Of a DNA stretch of 64,000 bases, positions 4,101 through 25,860 are shown in pieces; position 1 is the stretch's first letter, and every line of letters starts with the position of its first letter. Source of the stretch: Ostrea edulis (taxonomy: Eukaryota). The position numbers and the translations under genes are program-made. The stretch is from the NCBI RefSeq assembly GCF_947568905.1, contig NC_079172.1:60760001-60824000 (forward strand). Reading direction: 5' to 3'. The notes under the pieces were generated by a model. The model had not been told where the DNA came from. It was given only the letters and a program-made list of their open reading frames with translations, and did no database searches.

Positions 4101-7100
4101 TTAATAAGCTGTTATGGGGGGTTGGGGGGGGGGGGGGGGGGGTTAAGCCAAAAAATTAGAATTGAACATTTTCACTTAGAAAATCAGTGAAAAGTTGCCC
4201 AAGTTAGATTATGTTGCCTTCTCGTGCCCACTTTTTCTGCTTCCTGTACACTTAAATGATGAACTCTTTTTACAAAGTTTTTGGGTTGTGATTTCCCAAG
4301 TCAAGTAATTAATAGCAGTGTGTTTCACAATTGGCATTAAAGTATCAAGTTTTTCTTATCTCATTTCAAATATTTATCTTCAAGGTTTCAAGTTTCCCAG
4401 TCTTTTTTTCACTCTCCTTCCAGTCATGATATACAGAAGGCCAAATTCTCCTGATACACCACAGACAGTATTGAAAGGAAAATATTTGAACAGGTCATAT
4501 TTGCATTTCAGACCTAGTCATCAAACCTGCACTACCTAATTTCACTTAGATTGCCTACAGTTTAAATAGAGGCCTTCCCACATTAAGCACTTGTCTTTTA
4601 GACCCAGGGAAGTATTTGGTAGAAAAGTTGTTCTGTAAACAGAGAGTTAAATGTCTTAGTTACAATGTTTGAGATAATGAGACAGCCTAATTGTTTGAAT
4701 TTCTGATTATGTCTATAAAGTTTGGAATACTTAGTTGTTAAGGACACATGAATGCAAGTCAACGAGACCCTGAGACTGGGCTTGTTCCCGTAAAACAGCA
4801 CAGTATGTTATATATAAAATTATAAGCATCGATTCGACATCACCCGACACATCATTCCTCAGTTTGAGAAAGATACAACACGATTTATATTGTTGATTCA
4901 AAGATCAGGATATAGAGCTTGTGGCAGGTTTGACTGGTCAACAGGGGATGCTTACTCCTAGGCACCAGACCCCACCTTTGGTGTTTCCAGGGGTCCGTGT
5001 TTGCCCAACTATCTATTTTGCATTCTTTATAGGAGTTATGAGATTGATCACTGAACATTATCTTCACTTGTTCTGCCAATGTAAACTGTCTGTAAATCTG
5101 TAGCTCTCTGGAAAAATACTGAGTCAGAGCAAAAATAGTTTCCTCAGAGAGCTGCAGTTCTTCTGAATCAGCTAAACCTTAACCCAAAGTGAATAATGGC
5201 TAAGGTTTAGGAGAATGGCAGTGATTATCATGCCCAAGGCCACTGAACCAATCTATACAGTGTTATACATCAGTTTCTAAACTCAGGATTTTCTTTAAAA
5301 TTTGTCCACGGAAAATGTAACTAAATTTCTATCACACAAAACAATTAACAAAAAAGGGGCTTTTTATTTGTGGACGTATGTTGGTAAAAATCCTCCCAGT
5401 ATGAAAGCTGTACTTGATAGTACATGCTTTGTGAAGATCTTCTTTTCTCAGACGGGTCATCTGATTATGAACGATAATGAAATGTCATTTTAATCAATAA
5501 AACATGATAATGAGGCTATTGATTGAAACATTTTCATCAAAGCAGTAGCAGAAACTGGTAGAATATTAATCAATAGTGTTTAGTCCAAGTGTCATTGTTC
5601 TTATCAGTGGAAGCAGTTTTTTGTCCTGCAGGCTTCCCTACTTTTCAACATGTTCTTTTTTCCAAACACCAAACATACCTTCAAAAGTTATATATATTAA
5701 AAATGTAATGAATGGGTTTTTTGGGGGGTTGGGGATTGAAAATACTGAATTAAAAAAACTCAATCCTTTAATTAATAGAGTAAATTTACAGCACTTGATG
5801 AAATTAAGTCATATTTCATCTAAGTAAGATCATAATATTTCATAATCTGGGACCCCTGTAATTCCATGCATCTGCCTCCTCCCCCCTCTGAAACATCTTT
5901 GCCTCTTGCCCTTTTAGACAACCAAGCTGTTCCTAGGCAAAGTCCCGTGGGGATCCGGGTTAGAATAGATCCTCAGTACCCCTTGCTTGTTGTAAGAGGT
6001 GACTAAATGGGGCGGTCCTTTGGATGAGACTGCAAAAACCGAGGTCCCATGTCACAGCAGGTGTGGCACGGTAAAGATCCTTCCCTGCTCAAAGGCCGTA
6101 AGCGCCGAGCATAGGCCGAAATTTTGCAGCCCTTCACCGGCAATAGTGACATCTCCATATGAGTGAAAAATTCTCAAGTGGGGCATTAAACAATATACAA
6201 TCAATCAATCAATCCCTAGGCAAGTATTTCACCTGTCAATTCTAGAAGCAGGTCACAAAAGGTATGAACCTACAAGCCTTGAAACTCCAGTTAATTATAT
6301 GGACTTGAAAGCATTAATGCACGTACCGTCTGGCAGTGTAGATATCTGCAGTAGCAGCAGTACATGTATGTAGCTCTATAATTTGAACAATCACATCACA
6401 ACATAGCACTCTAAAGTGGGGCATTTTTTTATGCTATTAAAACATGGTGTTTTTTTTCACAATTATAAAGGACTTATTTTGATGCTAGCTAATGAAAAGA
6501 TTAGAATACATGTACTTAAATGAAGTTGTTGCAAATATTTCCTTTCCTGTATAAATTGATAGGAGCGATCTCAAAAATAAAGTTTCACAAAAATGTCTTG
6601 ATCTACAAGTTGCATGCAGGCTACGCAAATGATTATTTTCTTTCCTGTATAGATTAGCAGGGGTGATATCACACATGGATTTTTATGAAAGTGTTCCAAT
6701 CTGTAAATTGCAGTCTTTAGATATAATGGTAAGAATGAACTCGAGAAAGCATTTCATTCTTTGTACCTGTATTTACTTTCTCTTTCAGTGCTGATAGCAG
6801 AAATCATCAACCATTACTTCCCTAAATTAGTGGAGCTCCATAATTACTCACCTGCTGCTGCCACGAAACAGAAGATGGAGAACTGGTACCTGCTCAATAG
6901 GTAAATGTGGCTGGCTTGGATTTTAATCCTGCTCTCAACAGTTTAAGAACATGGGATTGACAAGTACTGTAAATAAACTTTTATTCATTTGTGGGAAAAT
7001 TTCACAAGAACCTCATCATCGCGAATATTTCTCGCCGCAAATCAGTCCTTTAATGTCCCTCATATGTTTATGATTATGTTGGTCATGAAAATTAGTCGCC

Positions 7101-10100
7101 ATGGACCTAGTGAGTTCATCACTGGTAAACTGTGAAATAAAGTTGTCGCAAATAAAAGTTGGTTTTACAGTAGTCACCTATTTATGAATGTGAGTGTTTT
7201 AGTTGGATCACCATTCTATTTGCAAGATGGAAGTCACAATTTTTTAACACGCTTGCAGGAATGCTATCTTGCATAATGGTCTAACTTCATAGAAATTTCA
7301 AGGTCATTGGGCAGAAAAATTCTGAAATGTGTACAAAATTCAAGCAACACATATTCCTTAACCAATCGTTATCAAACTGATGTCCCTAAGATATGAAATG
7401 CTGTTCACAAGATATTGAGTATATTTTGAATCTGATTTTACTTGTTGATGCTGTCTTATCATTCTTTTGCAAAAATCTTGGTTTTCATTTGAATTTTAGA
7501 ATTTGATATCAGAGTCAAGGTCACCAGAGTGAAATTGCAGAATTCTTGAATGTTTTTGTCTATAACTGATGATTGCAAATGATGATGCTTTCTTGGACCA
7601 GTTTTCTTCTGAAAGAACCAGGGTCCCTATTGACTGTCAAGGTCAAATGACAAGGTCCTAATGATTGAAAGTAAAATCTGAATTTCCGGCCACCAGTGTG
7701 ACACAAGAATTAAGCCATGTTCTTTTCTGGTTTTTATCATGCTGCTACATATAAAGGATAGGGATGCTGCATTGCATGAAGATCTGAGTTCCTTTTTATT
7801 TGTGAATTCAAATATGAAAGGTCAAGGTTACAGGTGATAAAATTCTAAATGTTCACAATCCAATTATAGATGACCCATTTCCTGGAGCCCAGATTGAGGA
7901 AAGGCAGTAATTGTGAAGAAAGTGTTATTTTCATAAATTGTTCAATAAATCTGATTAAATCCTTTTATACATGTACCGGTATCTAAAATTATCCTGCAAC
8001 ACATGTTGTCTTGGACATTTTAGCAAGCAGAATATTTCTATTTGTAATGACAGTATTTAAGCAGTGAAGAACAAACATCCTCCCAGGCAGCTGACAGCTA
8101 TGTAACATGTTGCGTCTTTTGGATTTGGATGTTTTAATGATACACCATCACATAGATACAGTGGAATGGCATCAGAGGGAATTAAGAAATGTGACATTAA
8201 TTTTTTTGTAGGCGAGTGTTACGGAAGCTTGATCTTGACCTGTCTGATGAAGTCATTCGAGCTCTGGCAAACTGCAAGCCTAAGGTGGTCGAGAAGGTTC
8301 TGATGCTCCTCCGTCTGCAAATCGACAGGAACCTACAGAGACAAGGTAGGAGCCGATTGGAGATTGATGCCGGCTTCGCCCAGAGTATGGAACAGAGTAA
8401 AGAACAAAAAAAATCACATTCTGCCCCTGCTGATGAAAACAGTCGTAAGTCTTGTGTATCCATGTGTGCTTCCTGTCCTGGCACTTGTACACAGGCATCA
8501 GGTGAAAAGGTCAAATCCTCTGCCGATCTCTCCATTTTCGAAGAAAATCATAATAAAAAAAGTTACCTTTAATGATAGGGTTTGCAAACAGGAAATCAAT
8601 AACAAAAAAGTTTATGATCATAGTAAAGTTTACTGTATCTAGAAGTATTAAACTTCACAATTTTAGTACTACTTCTAGTAGTTAACATCCATAAATGTTT
8701 TTGTGAGGATGACCCTGATGTCTGCTGGCATATCCTCTCACTGTGGGCCTTCACTTTCACATTCTCTGTTGTCTGTTTATATACCAGAGCTTGGTCTTTT
8801 CACTGCATCTCACTCCACTTGCGAGGAAATAGTTCCTGGACCCGTCTCCTTTACATTGAGGGATTTGGTGTAGAGGACCAAGGCTTGATCTCTGTTTCTG
8901 ATATACATGTAATTTTCAAATTTACAACTGAACTCTTTTTTTAACAATTTCATATTAAACAGGGACTTTTTCTTATCTTTATTTGTTCTTTCATCTTATA
9001 CATGTAATTTTTGTGCACGAAAGTAATCATTTTGTATACCAGAAAATAGACAATTACAATGTAATTATATTTAGAATCTACTAATTGAGGAATTATCATC
9101 AACTTGGATTATATAATATGTATAATACATCTAAAAATTTACGTAATCTGAGACCTGACAAGGAAAATATATGGCTGAAACTCTGACAGGAGTGGACCTG
9201 CACACGCCATTTATTTATAACTCTGACAGGGGTGGACCTGCACATGCTATTTATTTATAACTCTGACAGGGGTGGACCTGCACACACCATTTATTTATAA
9301 CTCTGACAGGGGTGGACGTGCACACACCATTTATTTATAACTCTGACAGGGGTGGACCTGCACACGCTATTTATTTATAACTCTGACAGGGGTGGACCTG
9401 CACACACCATTTATTTATAACTCTGACAGGGGTGGACGTGCACACACCATTTATTTATAACTCTGACAGGGGTGGACCTGCACTCGCTATTTATTTATAA
9501 CTCTGACAGGGGTGGACGTGCACACACCATTTATTTATAACTCTGACAGGGGTGGACGTGCACACACCATTTATTTATTACTCTGACAGGGGTGGACCTG
9601 CACACGCTATTTATTTATAACTCTGACAGGGGTGGACCTGCACACACCATTTATTTATAACTCTGACAGGGGTGGACGTGCACACACCATTTATTTATAA
9701 CTCTGACAGGGGTGGACCTGCACACGCTATTTATTTATAACTCTGACAGGGGTGGACCTGCACACGCTATTTATTTATAACTCTGACAGGGGTGGACCTG
9801 CACACGCCATTTATTTATAGTGGTGTTGTTACTAAAACTTCGGAGATTTTCAGAAATAATCACCATTAGAATGACCAAGTAAAGTCTTTTTTGTTGACCC
9901 TTCATATTCAGGCTTCATTAGATTGGCACAACTTTATGGTAAACTGATTTACAGTGTATAAAACTGGACTATTGATTGATTGATTGATTGAATATTGTTT
10001 AGCGTCCCTCTCGAGAATATTTCACTTATATGGAGACGTCACCACTGCCGGTGAAGGGCTGCAAAATTTAGGCCTATGCTCAGCGCTTATGGCCTTTGAG

Positions 10101-13100
10101 CAGGGAGGGATCTTTATTGTGCCACACCTGCTGTGACTCGGGGCCTCAGTTTTTGCAGTCTCATCTGAAGGACTGCTCCATTTAGTCACCTCTTACAACA
10201 AGCAAGGGGGTACTGAGGACCTATTCTAACCCGGATCCCCACAGGAGATATTGATGAATGCAAATAAAAAAAAAAAAAACCCACATTTTATACAATGTGA
10301 TACAGACGACTTTTATTTATATGAGGAAACTTTATTCATATGATTCTCGTGAAAGTGCATTAAATTCACACACAGTACTACGCCGTTAAAAAAATGAATT
10401 TTACAACTGGAATGAAATTATTGAAGCTATTGTGTGTTTTTACTATAACGTGAGCAAAAGCAAAATGATGTTAATAATGATTAATTATAGGAATGACAAA
10501 TTAAGAGAAGATCACTGTAGGTGGTATGATGCAGAGCAGGGAGTGTAAAAATATTCCATTACTTAAATCGGTGATTATAGCGGGTTAAATTTCTGAAGTA
10601 TCGTTCGTGTGAATAATGTTGTAGCCGGATAATTCCTCCATTATTTGACAAGATGTGTTAGAGAGAATAGATTTTACCGATAACAGACTATTACGAAAAA
10701 TAAATAAGATTTTTTTAAAAAAAAAAGGAAGATCCTGTTTGAACCCATTACTGTAGATCAATGGGTTTAGTTATTAGTGATATTGAGTTCATCAGAGCTT
10801 GGGATATAAATGAAGGATTTTAATGTTGAATCAGGATTTAATGTCGCTGGAGGATTTTGTAAGTGTTGCCATTGATTATGATTTTTTTTTAAAAAAAGAG
10901 GTATATTGATTTAGATTCTGAAATACATAATGCAGATGTACTCTCTCGTATACATAATCTTACACTTTCTCCATTGTGTATTTTTAAATCTACAACTTTT
11001 TTGTTTGAAAAAAGATTTTTTGAAAGAACATGAAAAAGACATTTTTGCCAAATTTAACGATTTTGAAAACATTTCTGTGGAGTTTTCTAAAAAGTGTGGA
11101 TTAATTATTAGTTATTAGACATGGAAGAAAAATTAGATATAAAATTCCACAACCCCCTTTTTATCAAGTGACCTTAACCTTTATGTAAATGACCTTGAAC
11201 ATCAAAAGACCGTGTATCTCATTTAACCAAATATATGAAGTTTCCTTATAAAAGTCATGTTATACAGCATATCTGTAAGTTTTTGGTCATTTAATGATGG
11301 CTAAGAGGGACACGTCTTAACAAAGCAAATAAAGATGTTTAGAAATTATCTAATTTTGATACTACTATATTGAAATGCAGGAATATATATGATTTGATTC
11401 CATAAAAATTTAATGAATCATTATAACATACAGAAAAATATGAAATAAGATTTCTTAAAGTACACCTTAAATTGTTCACTTCCTATCTTCAATTCAAAAC
11501 CTTTCGTGATACATCAGTGACCTTGTTAGGACAATTTTATAAGGCTGATTACAAGGAAGAGAAGAACAGTGAAGTAAATGTATCAGTTTCACAGTAGTTT
11601 GGTGAGATTAAGCTCATTTAATACCGGCAGCTAGCTTCTACAGTATGTAAAGGATTAATATGAATTATTTGGAGAGATTATTTTAATCCTGGAATGGAAA
11701 TACAATAAGTGTAAGTAGGCAAAGCAATGGACTTTAAAGTGTGGGTAGATTAATAGTGTAAGACCCAGGACAATCCACGGAAAATAGTTAAATATAGTCT
11801 CACTGCTTAGGGGCTTTTGATGTAAATTCTTCATCTTCAATCAAGTGTTATTTCATGTTTACCCAAAGAATATAAATGTCAAATGATTGGTACATACTCT
11901 CTAACGTGTAAGGAGATCTTCACTATATAAATGTCAAATGATTGGTACATACTCTCTAACTTTATTAGTAAGGAGATCTTCACTATATAAATGTCAAATG
12001 ATTGATACATACTCTCTAACGTGTAAGGAGATCTTCACTATATAAATTTCCCATGATTACTAGTAATTGTGATACCTATTCAAAAGTCCTATTCAAGTTG
12101 ATATTGGATAATGGCTAAATTTCACAAAGCTAATTTAAGTTAACTTAAATCTTTAAACTTTACACAAGTGATAGGAGTATAGTCATGATTTGAGTATAGG
12201 TACAGAAGAAATCATTATTACATTAAAAAAAATCTTGTGACTCCCACTGTCACTCAGGTGAGCAGAATGTCCCATGGTTGTGACTCCCACTGTCACTCAG
12301 GTGAGCAGAATGTCCCATGGTTGTGACTCCCACTGTCTCTCAGGTGAGCAGAATGTCCCATGGTTGTCACTCCCACTGTCACTCAGGTGAGCAGAATGTC
12401 CCATGGTTGTCACTCCCACTGTCTCTCAGGTGAGCAGAATGACTCATGGGTCTCTAGGTATTTTGTGTATCTCTTGACCTTAACTTGTTACTGATGGTCA
12501 GTTTGCCATTTAATTTATTTAATCCTGCTAAGATTTGCTGCTCTATCAAGGGTAACATTGTGCAGATTAACAGGCCATCGTCATTCATGGCTTTTTGACA
12601 ATGGCAGTAAGCGTGGATAAGTTGGGACTGTTTTTCTGATTGGAAACCAATGCTAACAATGGAGGCTATGTTTCCAATGACATGTAGCAGGAATGCTTTT
12701 GGTTTTACGATACTGTGAATTTTTTCAGACCAATTAACTTCAAAATTCCTTTCATATCCGTGACACTAGTAATTTGGAACTTTTCAAATTTTCATTTGAT
12801 GGATTTAAAATACATATAATTGGAAAATAACTATGGATTACAGTGAAAGATTTAAGAGATATTCACGGACTGACTCGAAAGATAGTCGTAGTAAACTTAG
12901 GTCCAAAGAAAGTCGCAATGGGTCTTTAACTATGAAACCCAGCTCTAACGAGAGTAACGACGAAGCTGTAATTTACGGAGGTCAAACCTCGCGCAGGGTG
13001 AGCGGGGAGTTGAAAGGAAGACTAAGAGAATATAATAAAAAAGAGAGTGGAGAAGTGAACGGCAGACAGAGGGGCAGTAGTGAATTCAATCGTAAAAGTG

Positions 13101-16100
13101 CAGAGATTTATCATAGCAATAAATCCAGTAGGGAGGGTGGAGAATTGAACAGCAGGGGGAAAGCAAGTGCAGAAAATAACAGTGGTAAACACACATCGAA
13201 AACCAAAGATCGCAGAAGACAAACGAAAGAACCACAATCTCAAATGGGTAGGCTCTATGTACAGATATGATTGTATGTGAATCTCTCGATTTAGCTGATG
13301 GAAAATGCATCCACCTTTGTAATTATAGTAGTAAATGCCTACATGTAATATGTTTTGAGAGATTTTCTGGGAAACAAATTGGGTGTTTGAAAGGAAGGTT
13401 TGGTATTTCAATCTTCTCGGCCTTAATATAATCAAAGGAGCCAAATACAACCTTCTGTATATACAGACGCCTGGTATTGAATATATGTGTAGAGTGGGAA
13501 ATAATATTAACATAAAGAAAGTTGACTTTGCACTAGACTTGTTTCAAAATGAAATTGATAAATCACTGGGAACTCTCGATGATTGACAGAGCAGACCAGA
13601 GGGTGATTAATTCTTCATTCTTTACAGTGTATCAAAGTGCTCTATGTTAAATAATATTCAGTAAAATTGAAACTTTTGAACAATAATGATCAGTTTTTGG
13701 AGGTTGATAATGAGGCATGCTGTTGTACTGTGCACGAGATAGCAAGGTTTAACACGGTAGCTCCGACATGCAAACAGGTGCTAATAGTGCAACACAGCAG
13801 ATATTTTATGTCCAGTTCCATCGATTTTTAGTTTTCAATACTGATTAAAGTCCAAGATGTATGGTCTACTGAAATTAGCTCTTCCTATTGATTGATTAGT
13901 TAGAGGGTTGATGGTGTCAGTGTTGCTAGGAAAGGGGCCTGTCAACACTCGAAACCCACATCTGTTACAAAGTTTCTTTTACCTAAAATATACTCGGAAT
14001 GAATGTTAGGTTATAATGATCTTAAATGTTTACACACTGAAGTGAAACTTCTTTTGATAGTCGGAAGTTTAAAGTTCTTCAATGAAGACCACCAATTGAT
14101 ACTATAAGCATCTACTATAGAGCTTAAAACAAGTTTAAATCCTTTATATTTAGGTTTTGATTAAACAATGAGAAATGTACTTGCCAAATAATTTTCTCAC
14201 ATGGTTATTTAAAGATAATATCCGTACATGAGGAGAAATTATGGAATTTTCCCAAAACGGATATCATGATATTGTATTTAAAATTGTGAGAGAAAGAAAC
14301 ATGATAAAAAATCATATAGTCTAAGAGCAGACACAGACGAAATCGAGGTCTTTTCGTAGTCACATGTCTGTGCTGTTCGTTTTATCTGTCAGAATTTGTG
14401 TAGACTGTGAACGACTTTAATACGTAAATACTAACTCCTGTTTCTATGATGATTGTCTCTGTTTATACAATCACGAGAAAAGGAAATCGCGGCTCCGTTC
14501 CGTTGGGACACATTCAGTAGAGATTATGATGCTAGCAAGATTTGTGAAATTTACAATGATGGGTGGAGTTTTCTGATCCTAAAGCTAAATTACATGCAAA
14601 ATTAATGGACTTCTCACAATAGATAAGGAATCTTCAGAGCTAGATGGGAATGGACATTTTCTGTATGCCACAGCAGATGATTGTAATCAATTTTTGAATA
14701 AAAATATTATTTGAAAGAAAAATTCAGTGCCACAAATTTAATCTCAATGATAACATTAAATTCTTATTTTCTGCTTTCATTAAATTATACATGTAATAAT
14801 GCTCTCTATTTCTATTAATCTTCTGAATTCATTAATTAAATATTTGACATGTCTTGTTTAATGTCTGAGTATATTAGTATTCTGTTTGAATAGCAACAAT
14901 AGTGTTTCTTTTTATGAATATATGCCTCATTGATTATTGATTAAGTTCTTGCATTCTTCATAAAGCACCCAGAAACTTTTTTGGCTATTGCAAACAATTT
15001 ATTTACTTCTGTAATTGTAAAACATGAATTAATTATGCATTATTTATGAAGCTCATTTTCAATTCTGTTAACCTACACAAATTGTTTGATAAGAAACTGA
15101 GAAACGTTGGCAAATGTTTAATGAAATGCAACTTTTTGTTTCAGAGGCGCTAGTTCCTGTAAAAACAGGAAGGTCCTCTCCGGGAAAACTGGCATCTCCA
15201 CGGAAACTAGGAAAGGGAGAAATTCCCCACAACCACCCAGACCGATCGTAAGTATAATGGCCTGCTCTTTAGACAAGTGGGTCAGGGAGGGAGAAAATGT
15301 GACCAGCCAGGTACTGATTTGAACTAAGGACCTTTGTATTGTAGTACAGACTATACCACTTGAAGAGTTTTGGTCACTGGTTCGAAACCGTTTCACTGCA
15401 ATGTTTTCTTAAAGTTGTTGCTGATCTACACGTTATATTGTCGTCAACTATCTCTGCAGTCGTGTAATCTTTGTTATTTTTCTGCAGAAGAAAGTTGAAC
15501 AACAGATTTGATGTGTACAATCATTACCGACGGGATCTGAGTTCCAACACTTAAAATACATGTACCTATAATAAAACAGGAATGTATTTCGAAAACATGC
15601 ATATTGCATGATCATCATGTTCTATATGGTCTCCAAAATTTGGGCATTTGCTCCGAAATTATATTGTACTTGAGCAAGGATCTTGATGTATATTATTTCT
15701 TGCCTATTCATTAACCAAAATGATCTAAATTCAGAAAATTGACATAATAAAAATAACATTTCCCCTTCATTTTTACATAAAATTAATTTTTTCATGCAGT
15801 TTTCCTTTCAGAAAAATATCTATGAGTGCAGACTTGGACAAATGATGTTTATGCAATATATTCAAGTGACAGAAAAATTATATTAGATATTGCATTTCTA
15901 AATAACTGTTAATCTTATAGACAAAATAATGAGAAACTGTGTTGGACATGATTTCTTTTATTGAATGACATAAAAGTTTAATATCTTCCTTAAAATTTTT
16001 AGGGTGTCTGAGTATCGTAGTGAGTTAATGCACTTGTATCTCACCGCTGCGACCCGAGTTCGATCTTTAGGATCGGCAGTGGGTGTATGTGAGAAGTTAA

Positions 16101-19100: not shown

Positions 19101-22100
19101 ATACTGGGTTAGCACTATGTAGGATTGAGTATATGACACTAGGACTGATCTGTCTTGGATCTATATACACTGTAGTTACTGCCCTACAGACAGCTCTATG
19201 AGGGATTAACATAAATACCATTCTGTATCGTGGACATCAATATTTGGACAACTCACTGCCTGAGTCGGACAAGATCTACGAAATAGTTTTCAAACTTCAG
19301 CTTAGCTTAATCCTAAGTCGTTAACCTTACATGCTTAATATTTAAATGCTGTGTGGTGCATTTTAACATTTTTAAAAAAGATAAAAAGTACAAAGGCTTG
19401 TAATTGTAGAGTAATTCATTTTTGAATTAAACTTTTTGAGAACTATAATTCAATTTTTAGATAACGGTGCAAACATGATAAAGTGTTGACTTTACATATT
19501 CTTATAAAAACAAACAGTAAATTGGTTTAATTTAAAATTATTTATTTTGTATTCATATTTTTATTTGAAATGTTTACATCATGTTTTGAAGTATTGGTGT
19601 AAAAATCAAGGGCGGATCCGATGATTTTGGGTATGTAAAAAAACCCACTTACTGCCCAGTTCTTAGTAGTACACTGCATTTAGTCAGACCCATACGCAGA
19701 TCACGTCACTGGCTTATCTCCCCTTAACATATAATCAGAGTATTCTATGATTTGCTGATAGTGAAATTAATTCTAGTACTTTTAATTAATATTGGAATTC
19801 TTGTTGAATGGAGAATTACAAATCAGCGATACTGTATGTGTATTATAATAATTAAAAATGTCAGTTTATTCAAAATTTAACACAATGGTAGATTATGATC
19901 AGGACTGTTTTGTTTATTTCGGCATGCAGTAAATAAGTTTGGTCACCTCATCCTCCAAAATATAACACTGATAAGAGCTCACATACGGTACCGCTTTATA
20001 AAATCATACTATGAAGTACTGCTTTATAAAATACTATGAAGTACTGCTTTATAAAGTACTATGAAGTACTGCTTATAAAGTACTATGAAGTACTGAGAAG
20101 ATGTACAGTTCTTTTAATCACACACTGAGTAGCTAGTATATAAACAATTATATGTACCTTTACATTCATAATGAAATCAAACTTGTGTACAATTTTATCG
20201 ATAAGTGGTTTGGAATTTGTATATTGTATTGAATAGGACAGCAGATATGTAACATTTGTTTATTTATGAGAATTTCTTCCCTGATCATAGTACACTTGTA
20301 GAAACTTGTTTACATCGGGTGCTTGTATACACAATATAGCAGTACAGTGTATCATTCATACACCACTGTAAGGAGTGTAACCATGAGCATGAAATAGTAC
20401 AGGGACATACAGACTCTTTGTTTGTCAGTCCTCACCTTAAGTCTTGATCATAACTTTTGGGCCATTCAAGAAAGACTAATAAAGCGACTTCATGTTAGTC
20501 AAATGAAAGGCTAAGGTCAAAGGTTAAGGTCAAATTTTATTTTTGGCCAAAACATATGAAATTATAAAAATTCATTTATGTAAAGAGCCAAAGTCAAAAC
20601 TTTTTTGGTTCAAGGTCATCTGTGAAGGTCAGTCTTTCTTCTTCCTATAAAAGGATTTAAGAAAAATTCAGATATAATTATGTCACAAACACACATTTTT
20701 CTTGTAATACTGTCATTCTGTTCATTAAGAAAACCACTCCAACAAATCATATTGAAAAAACTACTTTAATTAGAATTATATTTCATGAATGATGCAGTCA
20801 TTGTAGGTGATTGTGTCATTTCAGTTCCTACCATTTTGAGAGTCGTGGATTTTACGACCCATCCATCTACTTATATCCAACAACTGACAATGTACCCCGC
20901 AGTTACCTAGAGGAGAAGGAAATGGAATGCCTGGCTAAGGACGAGACTATTAGGGTGAGTTGTGATACATCAGACAATGGAGCGCGGGACTGAATTATTT
21001 ATTACAGAATAATCCTGCTCCGTGTCTCTGAGACTTTGTCAGGACTGGGTGAACTACTAGCCTGCTTTGGCAGCCATCCTTACTAGGAAGTCCTTTGAGC
21101 TTTGTCCTTAATAATAAAGTCGTAACAATTTCCACTTACAGGATTTGATGTCAGTCTTAGATTGTCAGTCAGCCTCCAACAGAAATCACTTAAAGCTGAG
21201 CTGAGAGCATTGAATGTTTATAAATTGTATTAACCAGCTACACAGAGTGCAACATCATGTGACCGAGATCTGAACGAGCAGGCCTCAGATTAAAAGTTTC
21301 TTCCATTTTTTTTTGGTCTGGTACATTGAAATACTCATTGATTTTAAAAGTCACAGACTTGTATCAATTCCACTAGATTTACCCAGCAGCCTGACATGGC
21401 TTCAGACTCCGGTAAAGAAGACTCAATTCACCAGCAATATGTATACCATAATAGTGAAGCAGCACTGCACTCTATTGATGGTCAAAGCCTGGGCTTTAAC
21501 AGTCCTAATGGCCCGGACTATGGCAGTCCTGATGGCCTGGGCTGTGACAGTACTGATGACCTGCGCTGTGACAGTCCTAATGGCCCGGACTATGGCAATC
21601 CTGATGGCCTGGGCTGTGGCAGTCATGATGGTCTGGGATTTAGCAGTCCTGATGGCCCAAGCTGTGGCAGTCCTGATGGCCTGGGCTATGGCAGTCCTTG
21701 TGGTTTGGGCTATAGCAGTCCTTATGATCTGGGCTTTAGCAGTCCTAATGATCTGAGCTATGGCAGTCCTGATGGTCTGGGCTGTGACAGTCCTGATGGT
21801 CCGGACTGTGGCAGTCCTGATGGTTTGGGCTGTGACAGTCCTAATGGCCCAGGCTGTGACAGTCATGATGTTCTGGGCTGTTGCAGTCCTGAGAGCCCAT
21901 GCTATGACAATCCTGATAGTGCAGGTTGTGGCAGTCCAGACGGCATTAAGGCTTTGACAGTTTGATAGCCCGGGCTACGGCATTCCTGATGTAGAAACAT
22001 GTACTGTAAATCACTTATATATGTCACGATACTAGTTCCGCGATTTGACTTGTTTTGTAGATGTTAAATACGAAAGTGAACAGATTAGAACAACTAAACA

Positions 22101-22970
22101 GGATTAAAGAAGAGAGACTCACAGACATGAAATACCAGCTTGTCAATGACTTTAGAATACTTCGCTTTACCAACAAAAGACATTTCCTACGATAATCTAA
22201 TTTTTGGCACATCACAATCCCTGATTTGTCCCACTGAATTTTTTCTTGACTAGCAGCAATATTCACTATACCCTCTACTAATGGATACTGTAGTTCCCAT
22301 CAGGAGTTCATGAATTGATGTTTTCAAATGTAGAGGGGTTCTTATTTTCAATTTTCAGTCTATAACGACAAAAATTCTTTTGTCTAAATCACATTCAACA
22401 GAAAAAAAACCTCCCCAAATAAACAGAATATTCTTCTTCTGAGAACGAAATCATTTATGAACTCAGGAATTTTACTTTTTTGTAGATACTGAATTCCAAA
22501 ATCAGGAGATTAGAACATCTCATACAGCTTAAAGATACGCGGCTCCTTGAGCTCCAGGGACAATACAGTCGTGAGCAGAGACTGTATTACATGGCCGCTA
22601 GAAATAATATTTTACGATAACACAACATTAATATCGTATTCTTCTCATTTCATTAACATCACCTCAATGTTTATTTCAGTGTACCCTCTTGCTTTGCTCA
22701 CTATTTTTATGTTATAGTCTTGACTTAACTTTAAGTTTTTTCCGTGAATTGAATGCTACTCACTCTTACTTTACGTCGACTGGACTTGGGGAAACCTATT
22801 GCATGTTCACCATTTTTTCATGTCATATTTTGTAGATGCTCAATTCAAAAATTCGACGACTTGAACACCTCTTACAGTTAAAAGAAACCAGAATGTTAGA
22901 TCTACAAGGGCAATTAGCAAGAGAGCAAGGCCTGTACTACGTAACCAGCAGGAAAAATGTTGTCAAATAA
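943..22970 (+). CDS. SPEF1: Sperm flagellar protein 1-like, copy A (multi-exon; exons 943-1102, 6789-6900, 8212-8444, [unresolved middle], 20825-20954, alternative last exons 22061-22195 / 22486-22620 / 22836-22970)
   Basis: LYQWIDRIPLSRPKKNVGKDFSDG / VLIAEIINHYFPKLVELHNY...NWYLLNR / RVLRKLDLDLSDEVIRALANCKPKVVEKVLMLLR and C-terminal EEKE..L.KDETI / LNSKIRRLEHLLQLK are characteristic SPEF1 motifs. GT-AG boundaries have consistent phases. Confidence 0.88.
5944..6214 (+). mobile_element. SINE-like family A (about 270 bp, (CAAT)n tail)
   Basis: Homologous to copies at 9971, 47453 and 48738. Confidence 0.8.
6789..6900 (+). CDS. SPEF1: SPEF1-A exon 2 (112 nt, phase 1 to 2)
   Basis: tttcag|...|gtaaat; VLIAEIINHYFPKLVELHNYSPAAATKQKMENWYLLNR. 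Confidence 0.92.
6967..7170. mobile_element. MITE with TA TSD
   Basis: TA|CTGTAAA..AACTTTTATT ... AATAAAAGTT..TTTACAG|TA. Confidence 0.55.
8212..8444 (+). CDS. SPEF1: SPEF1-A exon 3 (phase 2 to 1; frame also reads through to a stop at 8572)
   Basis: ttttgtag acceptor; RVLRKLDLDLSDEVIRALANCKPKVVEKVLMLLRLQID; GTAAGT at 8445. Confidence 0.85.
9181..9819. repeat. 40-bp minisatellite x16
   Basis: ctctgacaggggtggacctgcacacgccatttatttataa. Confidence 0.95.
9971..10245 (-). mobile_element. SINE-like family A
   Basis: (ATTG)n tail and body collinear with 5944-6214. Confidence 0.8.
11870..12047. repeat. About 53-bp tandem repeat x3
   Basis: tataaatgtcaaatgattggtacatactctctaac... Confidence 0.85.
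12235..12449. repeat. 43-bp minisatellite x5 (each unit carries CAGGTGAGC)
   Basis: ttgtgactcccactgtcactcaggtgagcagaatgtcccatgg. Confidence 0.9.
12833..13247 (+). CDS. Candidate alternative first exon (or nested gene) in SPEF1-A intron; S/R/K/E/G-rich
   Basis: 145-aa ORF with good Kozak context (aactATGg), richer in GC than its flanks, degenerate SGELNxR repeats, phase-1 donor ATGG|GTAGGC. Confidence 0.5.
16002..16140 (+). mobile_element. Degenerate tRNA-derived SINE
   Basis: B-box-like GAGTTCGATC at 16056 followed by a GGGTTTTCTCC core. Confidence 0.5.
16840..17300. repeat. Two diverged copies of a hairpin-forming unit (22-bp perfect arms at 16844-16865 and 16924-16945)
   Basis: aaatacacgagggtatgaactg ... 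cagttcataccctcgtgtattt. Confidence 0.65.
18530..19110. repeat. Degenerate about 33-bp minisatellite
   Basis: ttactgggacaattttatgatgggatttacatag. Confidence 0.85.
20825..20954 (+). CDS. SPEF1: SPEF1-A penultimate exon (130 nt, phase 2 to 0)
   Basis: NVPRSYLEEKEMECLAKDETIR|gtgagt; same length and phases as the copy B exon at 52145-52274. Confidence 0.88.
21396..21965 (+). CDS. 189-aa ORF with 19 octapeptide repeats (GSPDGLGC consensus; 24-bp tandem repeat); possible alternative last exon
   Basis: No indel across 19 diverged units; in-frame phase-0 CAGCAG acceptor at 21384-21389; own ATG in good context. Two other frames are also largely open. Confidence 0.4.
   Translation: MASDSGKEDSIHQQYVYHNSEAALHSIDGQSLGFNSPNGPDYGSPDGLGCDSTDDLRCDSPNGPDYGNPDGLGCGSHDGLGFSSPDGPSCGSPDGLGYGSPCGLGYSSPYDLGFSSPNDLSYGSPDGLGCDSPDGPDCGSPDGLGCDSPNGPGCDSHDVLGCCSPESPCYDNPDSAGCGSPDGIKALTV
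22061..22195 (+). CDS. SPEF1: SPEF1-A alternative last exon T1 (MLNTKVNRLEQLNRIKEERL...FLR*)
   Basis: ttttgtag|ATG, 44 codons + TAA, coiled-coil homology; AATAAA near 22418. Confidence 0.72.
   Translation: MLNTKVNRLEQLNRIKEERLTDMKYQLVNDFRILRFTNKRHFLR
22486..22620 (+). CDS. SPEF1: SPEF1-A alternative last exon T2 (ILNSKIRRLEHLIQLKDTRL...ILR*)
   Basis: tttttgtag|ATA, 44 codons + TAA. Confidence 0.82.
   Translation: MLNSKIRRLEHLIQLKDTRLLELQGQYSREQRLYYMAARNNILR
22836..22970 (+). CDS. SPEF1: SPEF1-A alternative last exon T3 (MLNSKIRRLEHLLQLKETRM...VVK*)
   Basis: ttttgtag|ATG, 44 codons + TAA; ATTAAA near 22999. Confidence 0.82.
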   Translation: MLNSKIRRLEHLLQLKETRMLDLQGQLAREQGLYYVTSRKNVVK

Positions 22971-24830
22971 AAACACACCTCTCCGCCTTGAGCAGAGAGA
23001 TTAAACCATGTGATCCAATGCATATTGCAGCGCGACAACAGTATTGTGAAACATTTTCTCGAGACCATCCTCTCTTGCTTGTGTCTTTGTGTGTATTGTC
23101 TCATCATGTATATCAAATGACCAATCACAAGTTCTCTAACAAGTGGTGTGTGGGAATCTCCTACTAACTTATGTAACAAGCATGATCACTGGGTCTGGAT
23201 TGTGCTGAATTGACTGTGATATTTTTCTGTGATAATTCAGATTATCAGTGTATATATACATTCACATCTCCAATATTTTATTGAGTTATAGTCAATATAT
23301 TTGGTGTTAATCACCTCCATTGTAATTGAGGTCACTGATTGCTCAGACTAGTTTTTTCTTTCATTATATAAAATTAACACAGAATTTCTTTTGCTTGCTT
23401 CTAAAAAAGACTCGTAGTGTGAGGATGTAATGCTTTCATAGTGTTTGCCTTGGATCAGTTGAAGCAACTCTAAATTCGTGTATCATACGAATGACTTATT
23501 ATCTAAGTAAAGATTTATCAGTGTTGCCCATCAACTCAAGCTTGCTTTATTTTGAGAGTTCAAAGCTTAGGAAATTTTATGGCACCTTTCGTGAGACACC
23601 AGAGGGCAGCACCTGGCTGTAGATCCTCCTACCCCCTTTTTTTATCTCCCTTTATTTTAAAAGGGTTTTTTTTATCAAATTTTCAAACAATTTATCTGTG
23701 GGGTGTAGGGGTGTGTTAATTACTGTTGGGGAATGAAGCCTCTTTGGAGAAATTCTAGAATTCACATTGTAAATAGTGTACATAAGTCAAAATAACTCTA
23801 GACTCCTAATGAAGGCTTATAACCCTGAGTGTGAAGAATTCCGTGTTTGCCAAAGTGTTGTACATAAGAAAAGGGCAACTAATACTCTTAACAGTTATAC
23901 ATCCTAAATTTGTCATCAAAACTAAAATCACTATCTAAAGAAAATATTTGTATGGAAAGGGGTTTTCCTTGTTAGTAATATTTCTCAACAATTATAGTAC
24001 AATTATAGTACATAGTAAATAGTCATTTTTGTTTGGACTCTTTTAACTTGTGTTCTCAAGCTTCTTTGTTCTGTCTGGCTTATTTTATGAGGTCTAGATA
24101 TTTTTTTTTTTTTAAAATCTGTCTTTTTATACTTTCTTTTGTGTTTTTACAAATCTGAACATGCATGAATATGTCAAAATTTGGAATTCTGTGTAGAATG
24201 AATATTTCTAGTCTTATCTTATATAATTGTGCTGTGCATTTATATGTTTGAAATACAGGGAACTGTCATCCATCATTAATTCAAAAAGTGTATAATTAAA
24301 TTATATGTCAATTTTTGTTAAAAAGACAAGATTCGTCGTCGATTTTTTATGTATGGACAATCAATACCGGTTCCTGTTTTGTATTCATGTATGAAAGCAA
24401 TGTCAATTGTTTTTACGTTTTCATTGGGAAAAAAATCTTTTTGCTCCTTAAATGATGGTGTTTTTGATTTGTTCACAGAATGTTTGAAATTTATATACAA
24501 ATTTTGTGTTATGCAACATGTTTGGGCTTTGTGTTCAATCTAATTGAGGAAAGAATTACAGTGATTTGGCTACAATCATTACAAGCTGTATATCACACTG
24601 ACTCTTCACACAGAGAGTTGGGAGGAAATGTCTGAATGCCTTCTTTTGTGTTGATGTATACAAAAGTTACCATTATTTATGTAAAAGAGATATATTTATT
24701 TACAAGTTCAATTAAACTCTTTCTACCAGACCATGTCCTTTTTCTTATTAAATTGAAGATATTTTATTGTCAATATATGAAAGACGAAAGGAATGGGCAC
24801 AATTTCTTAAAACTTAGAGCACCCTTTCCT

Positions 24831-25860
24831 TTTTAGGTCACCTGAGTAAACTCAGGTGACCTATTGCAATTGGTTGTCGTCCGACATCGTGCGACGTGCG
24901 TCGTCCATTAACAACTTCTTTCCAGAAACTACTGGGCAGCCAATCTTGACCAAATTTGGTATGTAGCATCTGTAGGTGAAGGAGAATATCTATTCTCCAT
25001 GTGACCTAATGACAGTATATAGAATCCATATCCACCCTCCATGTGACCTAATGACAGTATATAGAATCCATATCCACCCTCCATGTGACCTAATGATATG
25101 GAATCCATATCCACCCTCCATGTGACCTAATGACATGGAATCCATATCCACCCTCCATGTGACCTAATGATATGGAATCCATATCCACCCTCCATGTGAC
25201 CTAATGACAGTATATAGAATCCATATCCACCCTCCATGTGACCTAATGACATGGAATCCATATCCACCCTCCATGTGACCTAATGACATGGAATCCATAT
25301 CCACCCTCCATGTGACCTAATGACAGTATATTGAATCCATATCCACCCTCCATGTGACCTAATGACAGTATATAGAATCCATATCCACCCTCCATGTGAC
25401 CTAATGACATGGAATCCATATCCACCCTCCATGTGACCTAATGACATGGAATCCATATCCACCCTCCATGTGACCTAATGATATGGAATCCATATCCACC
25501 CTCCATTTGACCTAATGACAGTATATAGAATCCATATCCACCCTCCATGTGACCTAATGACATGGAATCCATATCCACACTGTATCAGTTTTCTGTGAAA
25601 ACCAAAGAAGCATCCTCACGTATTATAGAATCAGGTTTACCCCACAATCCCTGAGGCCACAATAGAGGTTCCAAGTTTTCCATAGATACATAGAAACATT
25701 CTTTAAGAATTCCCATCTGGAAAACAACATTTGATAGATTGAAGTGTATGTAGTCTTAAAGTAAATTCAAGTTAGTTTACACCATAACCCATGGTCAGGG
25801 TAAGCTTGAAGTTTTAAACAAGAATCTCTCCAACAAAAATTCATTAATAATTTTCTTTAA
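24831..25860 (+). mobile_element. Helentron/HINE-like non-autonomous element with internal tandem array
   Basis: T-run followed by perfect palindrome AGGTCACCTGAG-TAAA-CTCAGGTGACCT (24835-24862), then a 37/47-bp tandem array; class assignment is from recalled architecture. Confidence 0.5.
24995..25578. repeat. 37/47-bp tandem array
   Basis: ctccatgtgacctaatgac(agtatata)..gaatccatatccacc. Confidence 0.93.

What the first reader, a model, noticed from the sequence alone, without database searches (positions are those of the whole stretch)
22061..22970. Triplicated terminal coiled-coil exon in SPEF1-A
Seen: three tandem exons (22061, 22486, 22836), each exactly 135 nt, each behind tttgtag at phase 0 and ending in TAA. 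T2 and T3 share 29/44 residues and differ at many silent positions (TCC/TCA, ATC/ATT, AGG/CGA, AGA/CGA, TTA/CTT, CAT/CAC), which suggests purifying selection. T1 is more diverged (15/44 vs T3) yet keeps the length and hydrophobic pattern. Inference: alternative last exons that give three dimerisation tails and distinct 3'UTRs, possibly controlling homo- vs heterodimer specificity.
Basis: partly seen in the sequence, partly recalled or inferred. Interest (0 to 1): 0.8.

Follow-up and report, generated by a model that had tools for sequence, protein, structure and literature searches.

The report
Three swappable tails on oyster SPEF1
A flat-oyster gene for a cilia and sperm-tail microtubule protein carries three old duplicates of its last coding segment, and choosing one of three splice acceptors swaps the back half of the protein's pairing helix; the isoforms are already in automated annotation, but I found no paper describing them.

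Summary
Three 135-nt units start at 22061, 22486 and 22836. Each follows tttgtag, is in phase 0 with the donor at 20954, and ends in TAA.

The gene is Ostrea edulis LOC125657494, "sperm flagellar protein 1-like". The same three units lie in the same order in Magallana gigas, Crassostrea virginica and Saccostrea echinata. Pinctada imbricata has two. All three are under purifying selection: omega is 0.115, 0.059 and 0.093, and omega=1 is rejected at p≤1e-6.

In O. edulis, spliced contigs join 20954 to T3 in four runs and to T2 in one run. RefSeq isoforms use T2 or T3. T1 use is shown only in Crassostrea and Saccostrea, by RefSeq isoforms and three spliced Logan contigs, so it is inferred here.

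The 3'UTRs are nested, not separate. T1- and T2-type transcripts run on through the downstream units. These are three alternative acceptors in one composite terminal exon.

The swapped part matches mouse Spef1 from residue 200. It is the C-terminal, dimer-critical half of the solved coiled coil (PDB 9IJX). T1 has a conserved Asn at a core a-position where T2 has Ile and T3 has Leu. Dimer specificity is plausible but untested.

This scan also noted exon duplication in SPEF1-B on this same window. Verdict: new member of a known kind, moderate interest.

The parts
20825..20954 (+). Constitutive penultimate coding exon of SPEF1-A. It encodes ...YLEEKEMECLAKDETIR, the N-terminal acidic half of the coiled coil. 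It is the common donor (20954|GT, phase 0).
   Evidence: The joint 19629/30->20824/25 and the joints from 20954 are GT..AG. tblastn of RefSeq isoforms maps here. It aligns to mouse Spef1 184-199.
20955..22060 (+). Intron upstream of T1. It holds a 24-nt minisatellite (21487-21944).
22061..22195 (+). T1: the first alternative acceptor plus 44 codons and TAA. It is the most diverged tail and has Asn at core a-position 13.
   Evidence: Sequence. Orthologues in three other ostreid genomes. Omega 0.115, omega=1 rejected at p=3.5e-10. Used in spliced M. gigas contigs L009-L011 and in RefSeq isoforms of four other oysters. No junction was seen in O. edulis.
22280..22316 (+). Conserved block in the T1-T2 spacer (AATGGATA...GAGTTCATGAAT). 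It is complementary to the block just upstream of the T2 acceptor.
   Evidence: Alignment of four species. The M. gigas inverted repeat I3 lies at the homologous place. There is no covariation: Saccostrea has 3 mismatches.
22450..22485 (+). Conserved T2 acceptor region (..ATTTATGAACTCAGGAATTTTAC-TTTTTTGTAG).
   Evidence: 88% of the last 25 columns are invariant in four species, against 18% in the spacer.
22486..22620 (+). T2: the second alternative acceptor plus 44 codons and TAA. Core a-position 13 is Ile.
   Evidence: Joint 20954->22486 in run X1. RefSeq isoforms X1, X3, X4, X7, X8, X11, X12, X14 and X16. Omega 0.059.
22571..22835 (+). Optional intron from a donor inside T2 (22570|GTGAGC) to the T3 acceptor. 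It gives the frameshifted short tail ...GQYS-HAQFKNSTT* of isoforms X5, X9 and X17. The donor is specific to O. edulis.
   Evidence: Protein tails. The other three oysters read GCGAGC at this site. The joint was not seen in the four runs laid.
22776..22835 (+). About 60 nt, nearly invariant, upstream of the T3 acceptor. It includes TGCATG at 22800-22805, 35 nt before the acceptor.
   Evidence: It is the only GCATG between the donor and T3 in O. edulis, M. gigas and C. virginica, and it sits at the same place in all four ostreids.
22836..22970 (+). T3: the third acceptor plus 44 codons and TAA. It is the major tail. Core a-position 13 is Leu.
   Evidence: Joint 20954->22836 in all four runs, from three studies. 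RefSeq isoforms X2, X6, X13 and X15. Omega 0.093.
22971..24730 (+). Common 3'UTR, shared by all tail types.
   Evidence: An 1880-nt contig of X1 covers 22869-24730. M. gigas L009 runs from T1 through T2 and T3 and about 1 kb further.

Best explanation
SPEF1-A of the flat oyster ends in one composite terminal exon that holds three old tandem duplicates of its last 135 coding bases.

The single donor at 20954 can be joined to any of three acceptors (22061, 22486, 22836). The first unit spliced in is translated to its own TAA. Any units further downstream are carried along as untranslated 3'UTR, up to a shared 3' end near 24.7 kb.

The choice replaces the C-terminal half of the parallel dimeric coiled coil, which corresponds to mouse Spef1 residues 200 to about 228, plus a 15-residue end piece. 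The N-terminal CH domain, the linker and the acidic first half of the coil stay the same.

Shown:
- the anatomy of the three units;
- their conservation across four ostreid genera;
- protein-level purifying selection on each unit;
- use of T2 and T3 in O. edulis, and of T1, T2 and T3 in Crassostrea/Magallana/Saccostrea;
- nested 3'UTRs.

Inferred:
- T1 is used in O. edulis.
- The three tails give dimers with different partner preference, different surface charge, or both. This would alter microtubule bundling or condensate behaviour in different ciliated cell types.
- T1 is set apart by a buried Asn at a core a-position.
- Acceptor choice is regulated through the conserved blocks upstream of T2 and T3, possibly by an RBFOX-type factor at the UGCAUG.
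For: Anatomy.

Gene identity: RefSeq names XP_048744028.2 and others, 'sperm flagellar protein 1-like [Ostrea edulis]', with precomputed PF06294 and PF11971 hits. Exon map.

Junctions in O. edulis-like RNA contigs: 20954->22836 in X1-X4; 20954->22486 in X1. X1 record 4 runs from the T2 acceptor through the spacer into T3.

Orthologous triplets with identical length, stop codon and acceptor lie in M. gigas, C. virginica and S. echinata. Annotated isoforms carry each tail in five other oyster species.

Spliced Logan contigs:
- L009-L011 carry T1. L009 is colinear with the genome for 1975 nt, through T2 and T3.
- L013 and L014 carry T2 and are colinear through T3.

The spacers have no AATAAA or ATTAAA in three of the four species.

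Selection: omega is 0.115, 0.059 and 0.093, with likelihood-ratio p of 3.5e-10, 2.3e-11 and 1.2e-6.

Exons and acceptors are conservation islands: 67-89% of columns are invariant, against 10-26% in the spacers.

Coiled coil:
- PDB 9IJX (Spef1 coiled coil) aligns at E=6e-9.
- In mouse, the dimer-critical residues V205, L208 and L212 and the basic surface K204, R207, K215 and R218 all fall in the swapped half (bioRxiv 10.1101/2025.07.31.667833).
- Type-specific core residues are conserved across genera.
- The T1-type coil of M. gigas is predicted as a parallel, in-register homodimer. Score 0.65 against a best control of 0.39; runs agree in at least 94% of contacts; partner pLDDT at least 78. The mark was reached by 21 of 30 proteins solved as pairs of one chain and 0 of 23 solved as single chains. 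The pass may come from memory of related structures.
Against: - No 20954->22061 junction was seen in the four runs laid. Those were contigs, which drop rare forms.
- No O. edulis protein with a T1 tail was found. Only cluster representatives are searched, and isoform X10 was never seen.
- The one contig over T1 in run X3 extends 16 nt into the intron, so it is unspliced there.
- All transcript evidence comes from de Bruijn contigs, which can merge pre-mRNA and mRNA paths. The nested-UTR reading needs long reads or 3'-end sequencing.
- No data here bear on tissue specificity, dimer specificity or condensate behaviour.
Confidence: 0.8

Rival explanations
1. Classical alternative last exons. Each unit is a separate terminal exon with its own poly(A) site and its own 3'UTR.
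For: O. edulis has one AATAAA at 22418, in the T1-T2 spacer. Contigs L010 and L011 end 25-36 nt after the T1 stop.
Against: L009 (T1 type) continues through T2, T3 and about 1 kb more. L013 and L014 (T2 type) and X1 record 4 continue through T3. There is no AATAAA or ATTAAA in either spacer of M. gigas, C. virginica or S. echinata. Contig ends are not RNA ends.
Confidence: 0.1
2. In O. edulis only T2 and T3 are functional. T1 is an intact but no longer used relic in this species.
For: No T1 junction in four runs. No T1-tailed O. edulis isoform was found. T1 evolves fastest.
Against: The T1 frame, length, TAA and acceptor are all intact. Omega is 0.115 on a tree that includes O. edulis. O. edulis-specific changes number only 2 synonymous and 2 conservative replacements, K7N and R39K. 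The core pattern, including Asn13, is kept. T1 is also the rarest form in Crassostrea, where the same 289-aa backbone is seen on 3, 7 and 46 contigs with T1, T2 and T3. It would therefore be easy to miss.
Confidence: 0.12
3. Only T3 matters for the protein. Use of T1 and T2 is splicing noise, and their conservation reflects RNA-level roles inside the 3'UTR or intron.
For: T3 is the dominant junction. T1 and T2 do lie in non-coding context in T3-type pre-mRNA.
Against: The constraint follows the codons. dN/dS is 0.02-0.3 while dS is 0.3-1.9. The exact 135-nt length, frame and stop are kept in four genera. An RNA-level constraint would not spare synonymous sites.
Confidence: 0.04

Closest known systems
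Mouse/human SPEF1 (CLAMP), coiled-coil domain, PDB 9IJX
   Same: It has an N-terminal CH_2 domain and a C-terminal parallel dimeric coiled coil. The oyster tail aligns residue for residue: RLEHLLQLK is identical in T3. The a/d core positions are kept.
   Different: I know of no report that vertebrate SPEF1 has alternative C-terminal halves; this rests on my own knowledge and two paper searches. The oyster gene offers three, and they fall exactly on the half that holds the dimer-critical and basic residues.
Tropomyosin (TPM1) alternative terminal exons 9a/9b/9d
   Same: Alternative terminal exons hold both coding sequence and 3'UTR and give different C-terminal ends to a parallel dimeric coiled coil (PMC8419188). 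That the tropomyosin exons are related by duplication is my own knowledge, not checked here.
   Different: The tropomyosin exons give transcripts with distinct 3' ends (PMC8419188). Here the three units sit in one terminal exon with nested 3'UTRs. The units keep identical length.
Mutually exclusive exon clusters born by tandem exon duplication (own knowledge: Kondrashov and Koonin 2001; Letunic, Copley and Bork 2002)
   Same: The copies are tandem and homologous, with the same length and the same phase, and only one is translated per mRNA.
   Different: Classical clusters are internal, and exactly one copy is spliced between common flanking exons. Here exclusivity comes from the stop codon of the first unit spliced in. 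The downstream copies stay in the mRNA.
Duplicated exon 2 of SPEF1-B in the same window (scan note s1-268701)
   Same: Same gene family, same locus, same theme: exon duplication feeding alternative splicing.
   Different: That case affects the CH (microtubule-binding) domain of the neighbouring paralogue through internal mutually exclusive exons. This case affects the dimerisation end of SPEF1-A.

Membership tests
SPEF1/CLAMP protein family | N-terminal CH_2 calponin-homology domain (PF06294) | tested here: met
   Precomputed Pfam hits PF06294 and PF11971 on the O. edulis isoforms that map to window exons 943-1101, 6788-6901 and 8210-8344.
SPEF1/CLAMP protein family | C-terminal coiled coil homologous to the Spef1 coiled-coil domain | tested here: met
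   phmmer against PDB: 9IJX 'Sperm flagellar protein 1', E=6e-9, query residues 13-57 on chain residues 19-63.
SPEF1/CLAMP protein family | The coiled coil forms a parallel dimer | tested here: inconclusive
   Prediction only. T1-type coil of M. gigas x2: score 0.65 against a best control of 0.39, with in-register same-residue contacts. The mark was reached by 21 of 30 solved homomeric pairs and 0 of 23 single chains. The pass may be from memory.
SPEF1/CLAMP protein family | Binds and bundles microtubules; localises to the central pair | not testable with these tools
   Needs biochemistry or imaging.
Alternative last exons with separate poly(A) sites | Each terminal exon ends at its own cleavage/poly(A) site | tested here: not met
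   T1- and T2-type contigs run on through the downstream units. There is no conserved poly(A) hexamer in the spacers. The evidence comes from contigs, not from 3'-end reads.
Alternative 3' splice sites within a terminal exon | One donor, several acceptors, and sequence downstream of the chosen acceptor retained colinearly | tested here: met
   Joints 20954->22486 and 20954->22836. M. gigas donor->T1 acceptor followed by 1975 colinear nt. Crassostrea sp. donor->T2 acceptor followed by about 790 colinear nt.
Tandem-duplication mutually exclusive exons | Tandem homologous exons of equal length and phase | tested here: met
   3 x 135 nt, phase 0.
Tandem-duplication mutually exclusive exons | Exactly one copy is present in the mature mRNA, joined to a common downstream exon | tested here: not met
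   The units are terminal, and downstream copies remain in the mRNA as 3'UTR.

The most novel reading that the evidence does not exclude
The three tails define separate pairing classes of a central-pair microtubule bundler. T1, with a conserved buried Asn at core a-position 13 (equivalent to mouse L212), would pair mainly with itself. T2 (Ile) and T3 (Leu) would form other dimers. One gene would then supply orthogonal SPEF1 dimers, or condensates with different properties, to different cilia: gill, larval velum, sperm.

Acceptor choice would be set by the conserved elements upstream of T2 and T3, for instance an RBFOX-type protein on the UGCAUG 35 nt before T3. CH-less isoforms from the internal promoter carry the same tails and would act as class-specific caps or inhibitors.
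Probability: 0.2. Interest if true: 0.6.

Novelty: new member of a known kind. Interest (0 to 1): 0.4.

Why it matters
Mouse work shows that Spef1 acts as a dimer. It also shows that the C-terminal half of its coiled coil controls dimerisation, phase separation and stable binding to the central pair (bioRxiv 10.1101/2025.07.31.667833).

Oysters have kept three natural versions of exactly that half, under purifying selection, across four genera. That amounts to a ready-made set of variants. They could be used to ask which coil features set partner choice, condensate behaviour and ciliary beat in an animal that depends on several kinds of motile cilia.

It also adds a clean example of how tandem exon duplication can create mutually exclusive protein ends through stop codons and acceptor choice alone, without separate poly(A) sites.

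For annotation, it explains a good part of why this locus carries 17 or more predicted isoforms.

Tried and rejected
- The look-up of encoding contigs returned nothing for non-longest isoforms. The longest isoforms were used instead.
- A protein-level tree of the tails supports a T1 clade (100/100). It cannot say whether the two Pinctada copies are orthologues of T2/T3 or an independent duplication, because 44 columns are too few.
- Tail-region searches with the O. edulis and Pinctada proteins found no relatives outside Ostreidae and Pinctada. This is a word-based search, so it is no proof of absence in other bivalves.
- The search for an O. edulis T1-tailed protein was blank. Only cluster representatives are searched.
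- I looked for docking/selector-type RNA pairing. One conserved complementary pair exists: GAGTTCATGAAT in the T1-T2 spacer against ATTTATGAACTC before the T2 acceptor. Saccostrea breaks it at three positions without compensation, so I do not claim a structure.
- Paper searches for the run accessions of the T1 contigs gave nothing. The tissue of origin is unknown.
- Paralogue dN/dS is not usable, because dS is saturated.
- The first dN/dS script timed out.
Full report
**1. The observation**

Each is 44 codons plus TAA. Each directly follows tttgtag.

The upstream exon is 20825-20954, as set by the spliced joint 19629/30->20824/25 and by tblastn of the annotated proteins. It ends ...ATT AGG|gtgagt in phase 0. 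All three acceptors are therefore in frame with it.

The resemblance is not chance:
- The repeat finder places the three starts in one family.
- A six-frame search of the whole 895-Mb assembly with T3 finds T2 at E=2e-13 and T1 at E=0.14. It finds only two other weak matches.
- Those two weak matches are the single terminal exons of the neighbouring paralogues: SPEF1-B (window 51826-51710, minus strand) and SPEF1-C (14 kb beyond the window).
- A profile built from the tails finds exactly three copies in SPEF1-A.

**2. What the gene is**

A search of the representative library with T3 led to three proteins. One of them is XP_048744037.2 of Ostrea edulis.

The word search then returned many RefSeq isoforms named "sperm flagellar protein 1-like [Ostrea edulis]", gene LOC125657494, with precomputed CH_2 and CAMSAP_CH domains. 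They map exactly to window exons at 943, 6788, 8210, 15144, 17698, 19590, 20825 and the tails.

Of the isoforms numbered X1-X17, I saw all except X10:
- X1, X3, X4, X7, X8, X11, X12, X14 and X16 end in T2.
- X2, X6, X13 and X15 end in T3.
- X5, X9 and X17 use a donor inside T2 (22570|GTGAGC), joined to the T3 acceptor. This reads T3 out of frame and gives ...GQYS-HAQFKNSTT*.

That internal donor is specific to O. edulis. The other oysters read GCGAGC there.

I found no O. edulis isoform with a T1 tail. X10 was never seen, and only cluster representatives are searched.

**3. Transcript evidence in this species**

Four runs guessed to be RNA, from three studies, were laid on 19500-25000. They are kept as Logan contigs.

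- The GT..AG joint 20954->22836 (T3) is present in all four runs.
- The joint 20954->22486 (T2) is present in X1.
- No joint to 22061 (T1) was seen.
- The X1 contig that carries the T2 joint continues without a break through the T2 stop and the 215-nt spacer into T3.
- A further X1 contig covers 22869-24730, which is the 3'UTR after T3.
- The one contig that covers T1, in X3, extends 16 nt upstream of the acceptor. It is unspliced there and says nothing about T1 use.

Contigs drop rare forms, so the absence of a T1 joint is weak evidence.

**4. Other oysters**

The genomic loci of M. gigas (L006), C. virginica (L012) and S. echinata (L008) each hold T1, T2 and T3. In every case:
- the order is the same;
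- each unit is exactly 135 nt and ends in TAA;
- each unit follows tttgtag;
- the spacing is 453-474 nt and 344-372 nt.

Pinctada imbricata (L007) has two copies. The downstream one (21443-21577) lies beyond the annotated gene end.

RefSeq isoforms carry each of the three tails in M. gigas/C. angulata, C. virginica, S. echinata and S. cucullata.

Three Logan contigs (L009-L011, from SRR5830791, SRR18748339 and SRR18748340) hold a complete intron-free 289-codon reading frame ending in T1. They are therefore spliced transcripts.

L009 is spliced at every upstream intron. After the T1 acceptor it is colinear with the M. gigas genome for 1975 nt: through T1, the spacer, T2, the spacer, T3 and about 1 kb more.

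Two contigs from another Crassostrea-like species (L013, L014) splice into T2. They are then colinear through T3.

The spacers hold no AATAAA or ATTAAA in three of the four ostreids.

Together with the X1 contig in O. edulis, this shows that the units are three alternative acceptors inside one composite terminal exon. Downstream units ride along as 3'UTR, and exclusivity at the protein level comes from the stop codon of the first unit spliced in.

The same 289-residue backbone is recorded on 46 contigs with T3, 7 with T2 and 3 with T1. This is a rough indication that T3 is the major form and T1 the rarest.

**5. Selection**

Pairwise Nei-Gojobori values between orthologues:

| Unit | dN/dS | dS |
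|---|---|---|
| T1 | 0.09-0.30 | 0.43-1.9 |
| T2 | 0.02-0.10 | 0.31-0.89 |
| T3 | 0-0.20 | 0.16-0.39 |

A Goldman-Yang codon model on the four ostreids:

| Unit | omega | p against omega=1 (best fixed kappa) |
|---|---|---|
| T1 | 0.115 | 3.5e-10 |
| T2 | 0.059 | 2.3e-11 |
| T3 | 0.093 | 1.2e-6 |

In a four-species alignment, the exons and the 25 nt before each acceptor are 52-89% invariant. The spacers and the upstream intron are 10-26% invariant.

The would-refute condition of the finding was "dN/dS near 1 or disrupted". It is not met for any unit across species. Variation within the O. edulis population could not be tested.

**6. What the swapped piece does**

The C-terminal 72 residues of the T3 isoform match PDB 9IJX, the mouse Spef1 coiled coil, at E=6e-9. 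Counting from the paper's residue numbers, the oyster exon junction falls between mouse Q199 and V200.

The paper behind that structure (bioRxiv 10.1101/2025.07.31.667833) reports:
- a parallel dimer with core residues I184, L191, V198, L201, V205, L208, L212, I219, L222 and L226;
- an acidic N-terminal half and a basic C-terminal half (K204, R207, K215, R218);
- loss of dimerisation, of phase separation and of ciliary function in V205A/L208A and L208A/L212A mutants;
- weaker phase separation when the surface charge is changed.

The constant penultimate exon therefore supplies the acidic half. The alternative unit supplies the whole basic half, including the residues needed for dimerisation.

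On this register the core positions are type-specific and conserved across genera:

| Tail | a-positions 6, 13, 20, 27 | d-position 23 |
|---|---|---|
| T1 | V-N-L-L/I | Met |
| T2 | I-I-L/I-Y | Leu |
| T3 | I-L-M/I-L/I | Leu |

The last 15 residues also differ by type.

An Asn at a core a-position is a classical partner-specifying feature of parallel dimeric coiled coils. This rests on my own knowledge of GCN4-type zippers and was not tested here. It makes a T1-with-T1 preference plausible.

The T1-type coil of M. gigas (P0082:262-336, two copies) is predicted as a parallel, in-register homodimer:
- Score 0.65 against a best control of 0.39.
- The runs agree in at least 94% of contacts, and partner pLDDT is at least 78.
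- The mark was reached by 21 of 30 proteins solved as pairs of one chain and by 0 of 23 solved as single chains.
- On eukaryotes the pass may come from memory of related structures.

The predicted interface runs through residues 294, 298, 301, 305 (the Asn), 308, 312, 315, 319 and 322. That is the a/d pattern expected from the mouse structure. This supports T1 still being a dimerising coil. It says nothing about specificity.

**7. Regulation (leads only)**

The 25-60 nt upstream of the T2 and T3 acceptors are almost invariant in four genera.

The T3 block contains TGCATG 35-37 nt before the acceptor in all four species (AGCATG in Saccostrea). In three of the four it is the only GCATG between the donor and T3. 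(U)GCAUG is the RBFOX motif (PMC8419188). A factor bound there could block T3 and favour the upstream acceptors. This is inference.

A 12-nt element in the T1-T2 spacer is complementary to the T2 acceptor block in three species. It is broken without compensation in Saccostrea, so I claim no RNA structure.

**8. Comparison and novelty**

The protein is a member of the SPEF1/CLAMP family: both the CH_2 domain and the coiled-coil match were tested and met.

The gene architecture works like tropomyosin's alternative terminal exons 9a/9b/9d, which give alternative C-terminal ends to a coiled coil (PMC8419188). It differs in that the units share one terminal exon and one 3' end.

It also resembles duplication-born mutually exclusive exons, but the copies are terminal and stay in the mRNA.

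All tail types are already present in automated RefSeq models of six oyster species. Four paper searches found no description of them.

Note s1-268700 covers the three-gene cluster.

I rate this a new member of a known kind, of moderate interest. The main value is as a natural variant series for the dimerisation and phase-separation half of Spef1.

Noticed in passing
window 12833-13255 (+): Alternative first coding exon (MDYSERFKRYSR..., 141 aa, Ser/Arg/Lys-rich) that splices to exon 15144. It gives isoforms without the CH domain (O. edulis X7 and X16, 'uncharacterized protein LOC125657494'). The same CH-less form exists in M. gigas, C. angulata and C. virginica, and there it is combined with T1, T2 or T3. 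These could be dimerising but non-microtubule-binding partners.
   Followed up: partly
window 22570/22571 to 22836: An O. edulis-specific GT donor lies inside T2; the other oysters read GC there. Joined to the T3 acceptor it gives a fourth, frameshifted tail, ...GQYS-HAQFKNSTT* (isoforms X5, X9, X17). It was not seen in the four runs laid. In T1-type mRNAs such a splice would lie downstream of the stop codon.
   Followed up: partly
window 21487-21944: A 24-nt minisatellite (about 17-19 copies, 76-78% matches) lies in the intron between the penultimate exon and T1. It is open in several frames (ORFs of 147-189 aa). It is probably not coding.
   Followed up: partly
window 22800-22805, and the homologous places L006:29587, L012:21858, L008:26673: A (U)GCAUG lies 35-37 nt upstream of the T3 acceptor, inside a block of about 60 nt that is invariant in four oyster genera. 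It is the only GCATG between the donor and T3 in three of the four species. It is a possible RBFOX-type site.
   Followed up: partly
window 22304-22315 and 22456-22467: GAGTTCATGAAT in the T1-T2 spacer is complementary to ATTTATGAACTC just before the T2 acceptor. Both blocks are conserved in Ostrea, Magallana and Crassostrea. Saccostrea breaks the pairing at three positions, so there is no covariation.
   Followed up: partly
L007:21443-21577 (Pinctada imbricata): A second, intact 135-nt tail unit with acceptor and TAA lies 330 nt beyond the annotated end of the Pinctada gene. It is not in the deposited gene model.
   Followed up: partly
window 51710-51826 (-) and L004:1498-1614 (+): Paralogues SPEF1-B and SPEF1-C each have a single terminal exon (ILQAKISR(M/L)EHLIHLKDVRIDDLQNR...). 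It is closer to the vertebrate Spef1 coil than any SPEF1-A tail.
   Followed up: partly
window 24830-25000: Contig depth jumps to several hundred or several thousand in all four runs, with many loose ends at 24829-24844. This looks like the edge of a highly repeated element just after the SPEF1-A 3'UTR.
   Followed up: no
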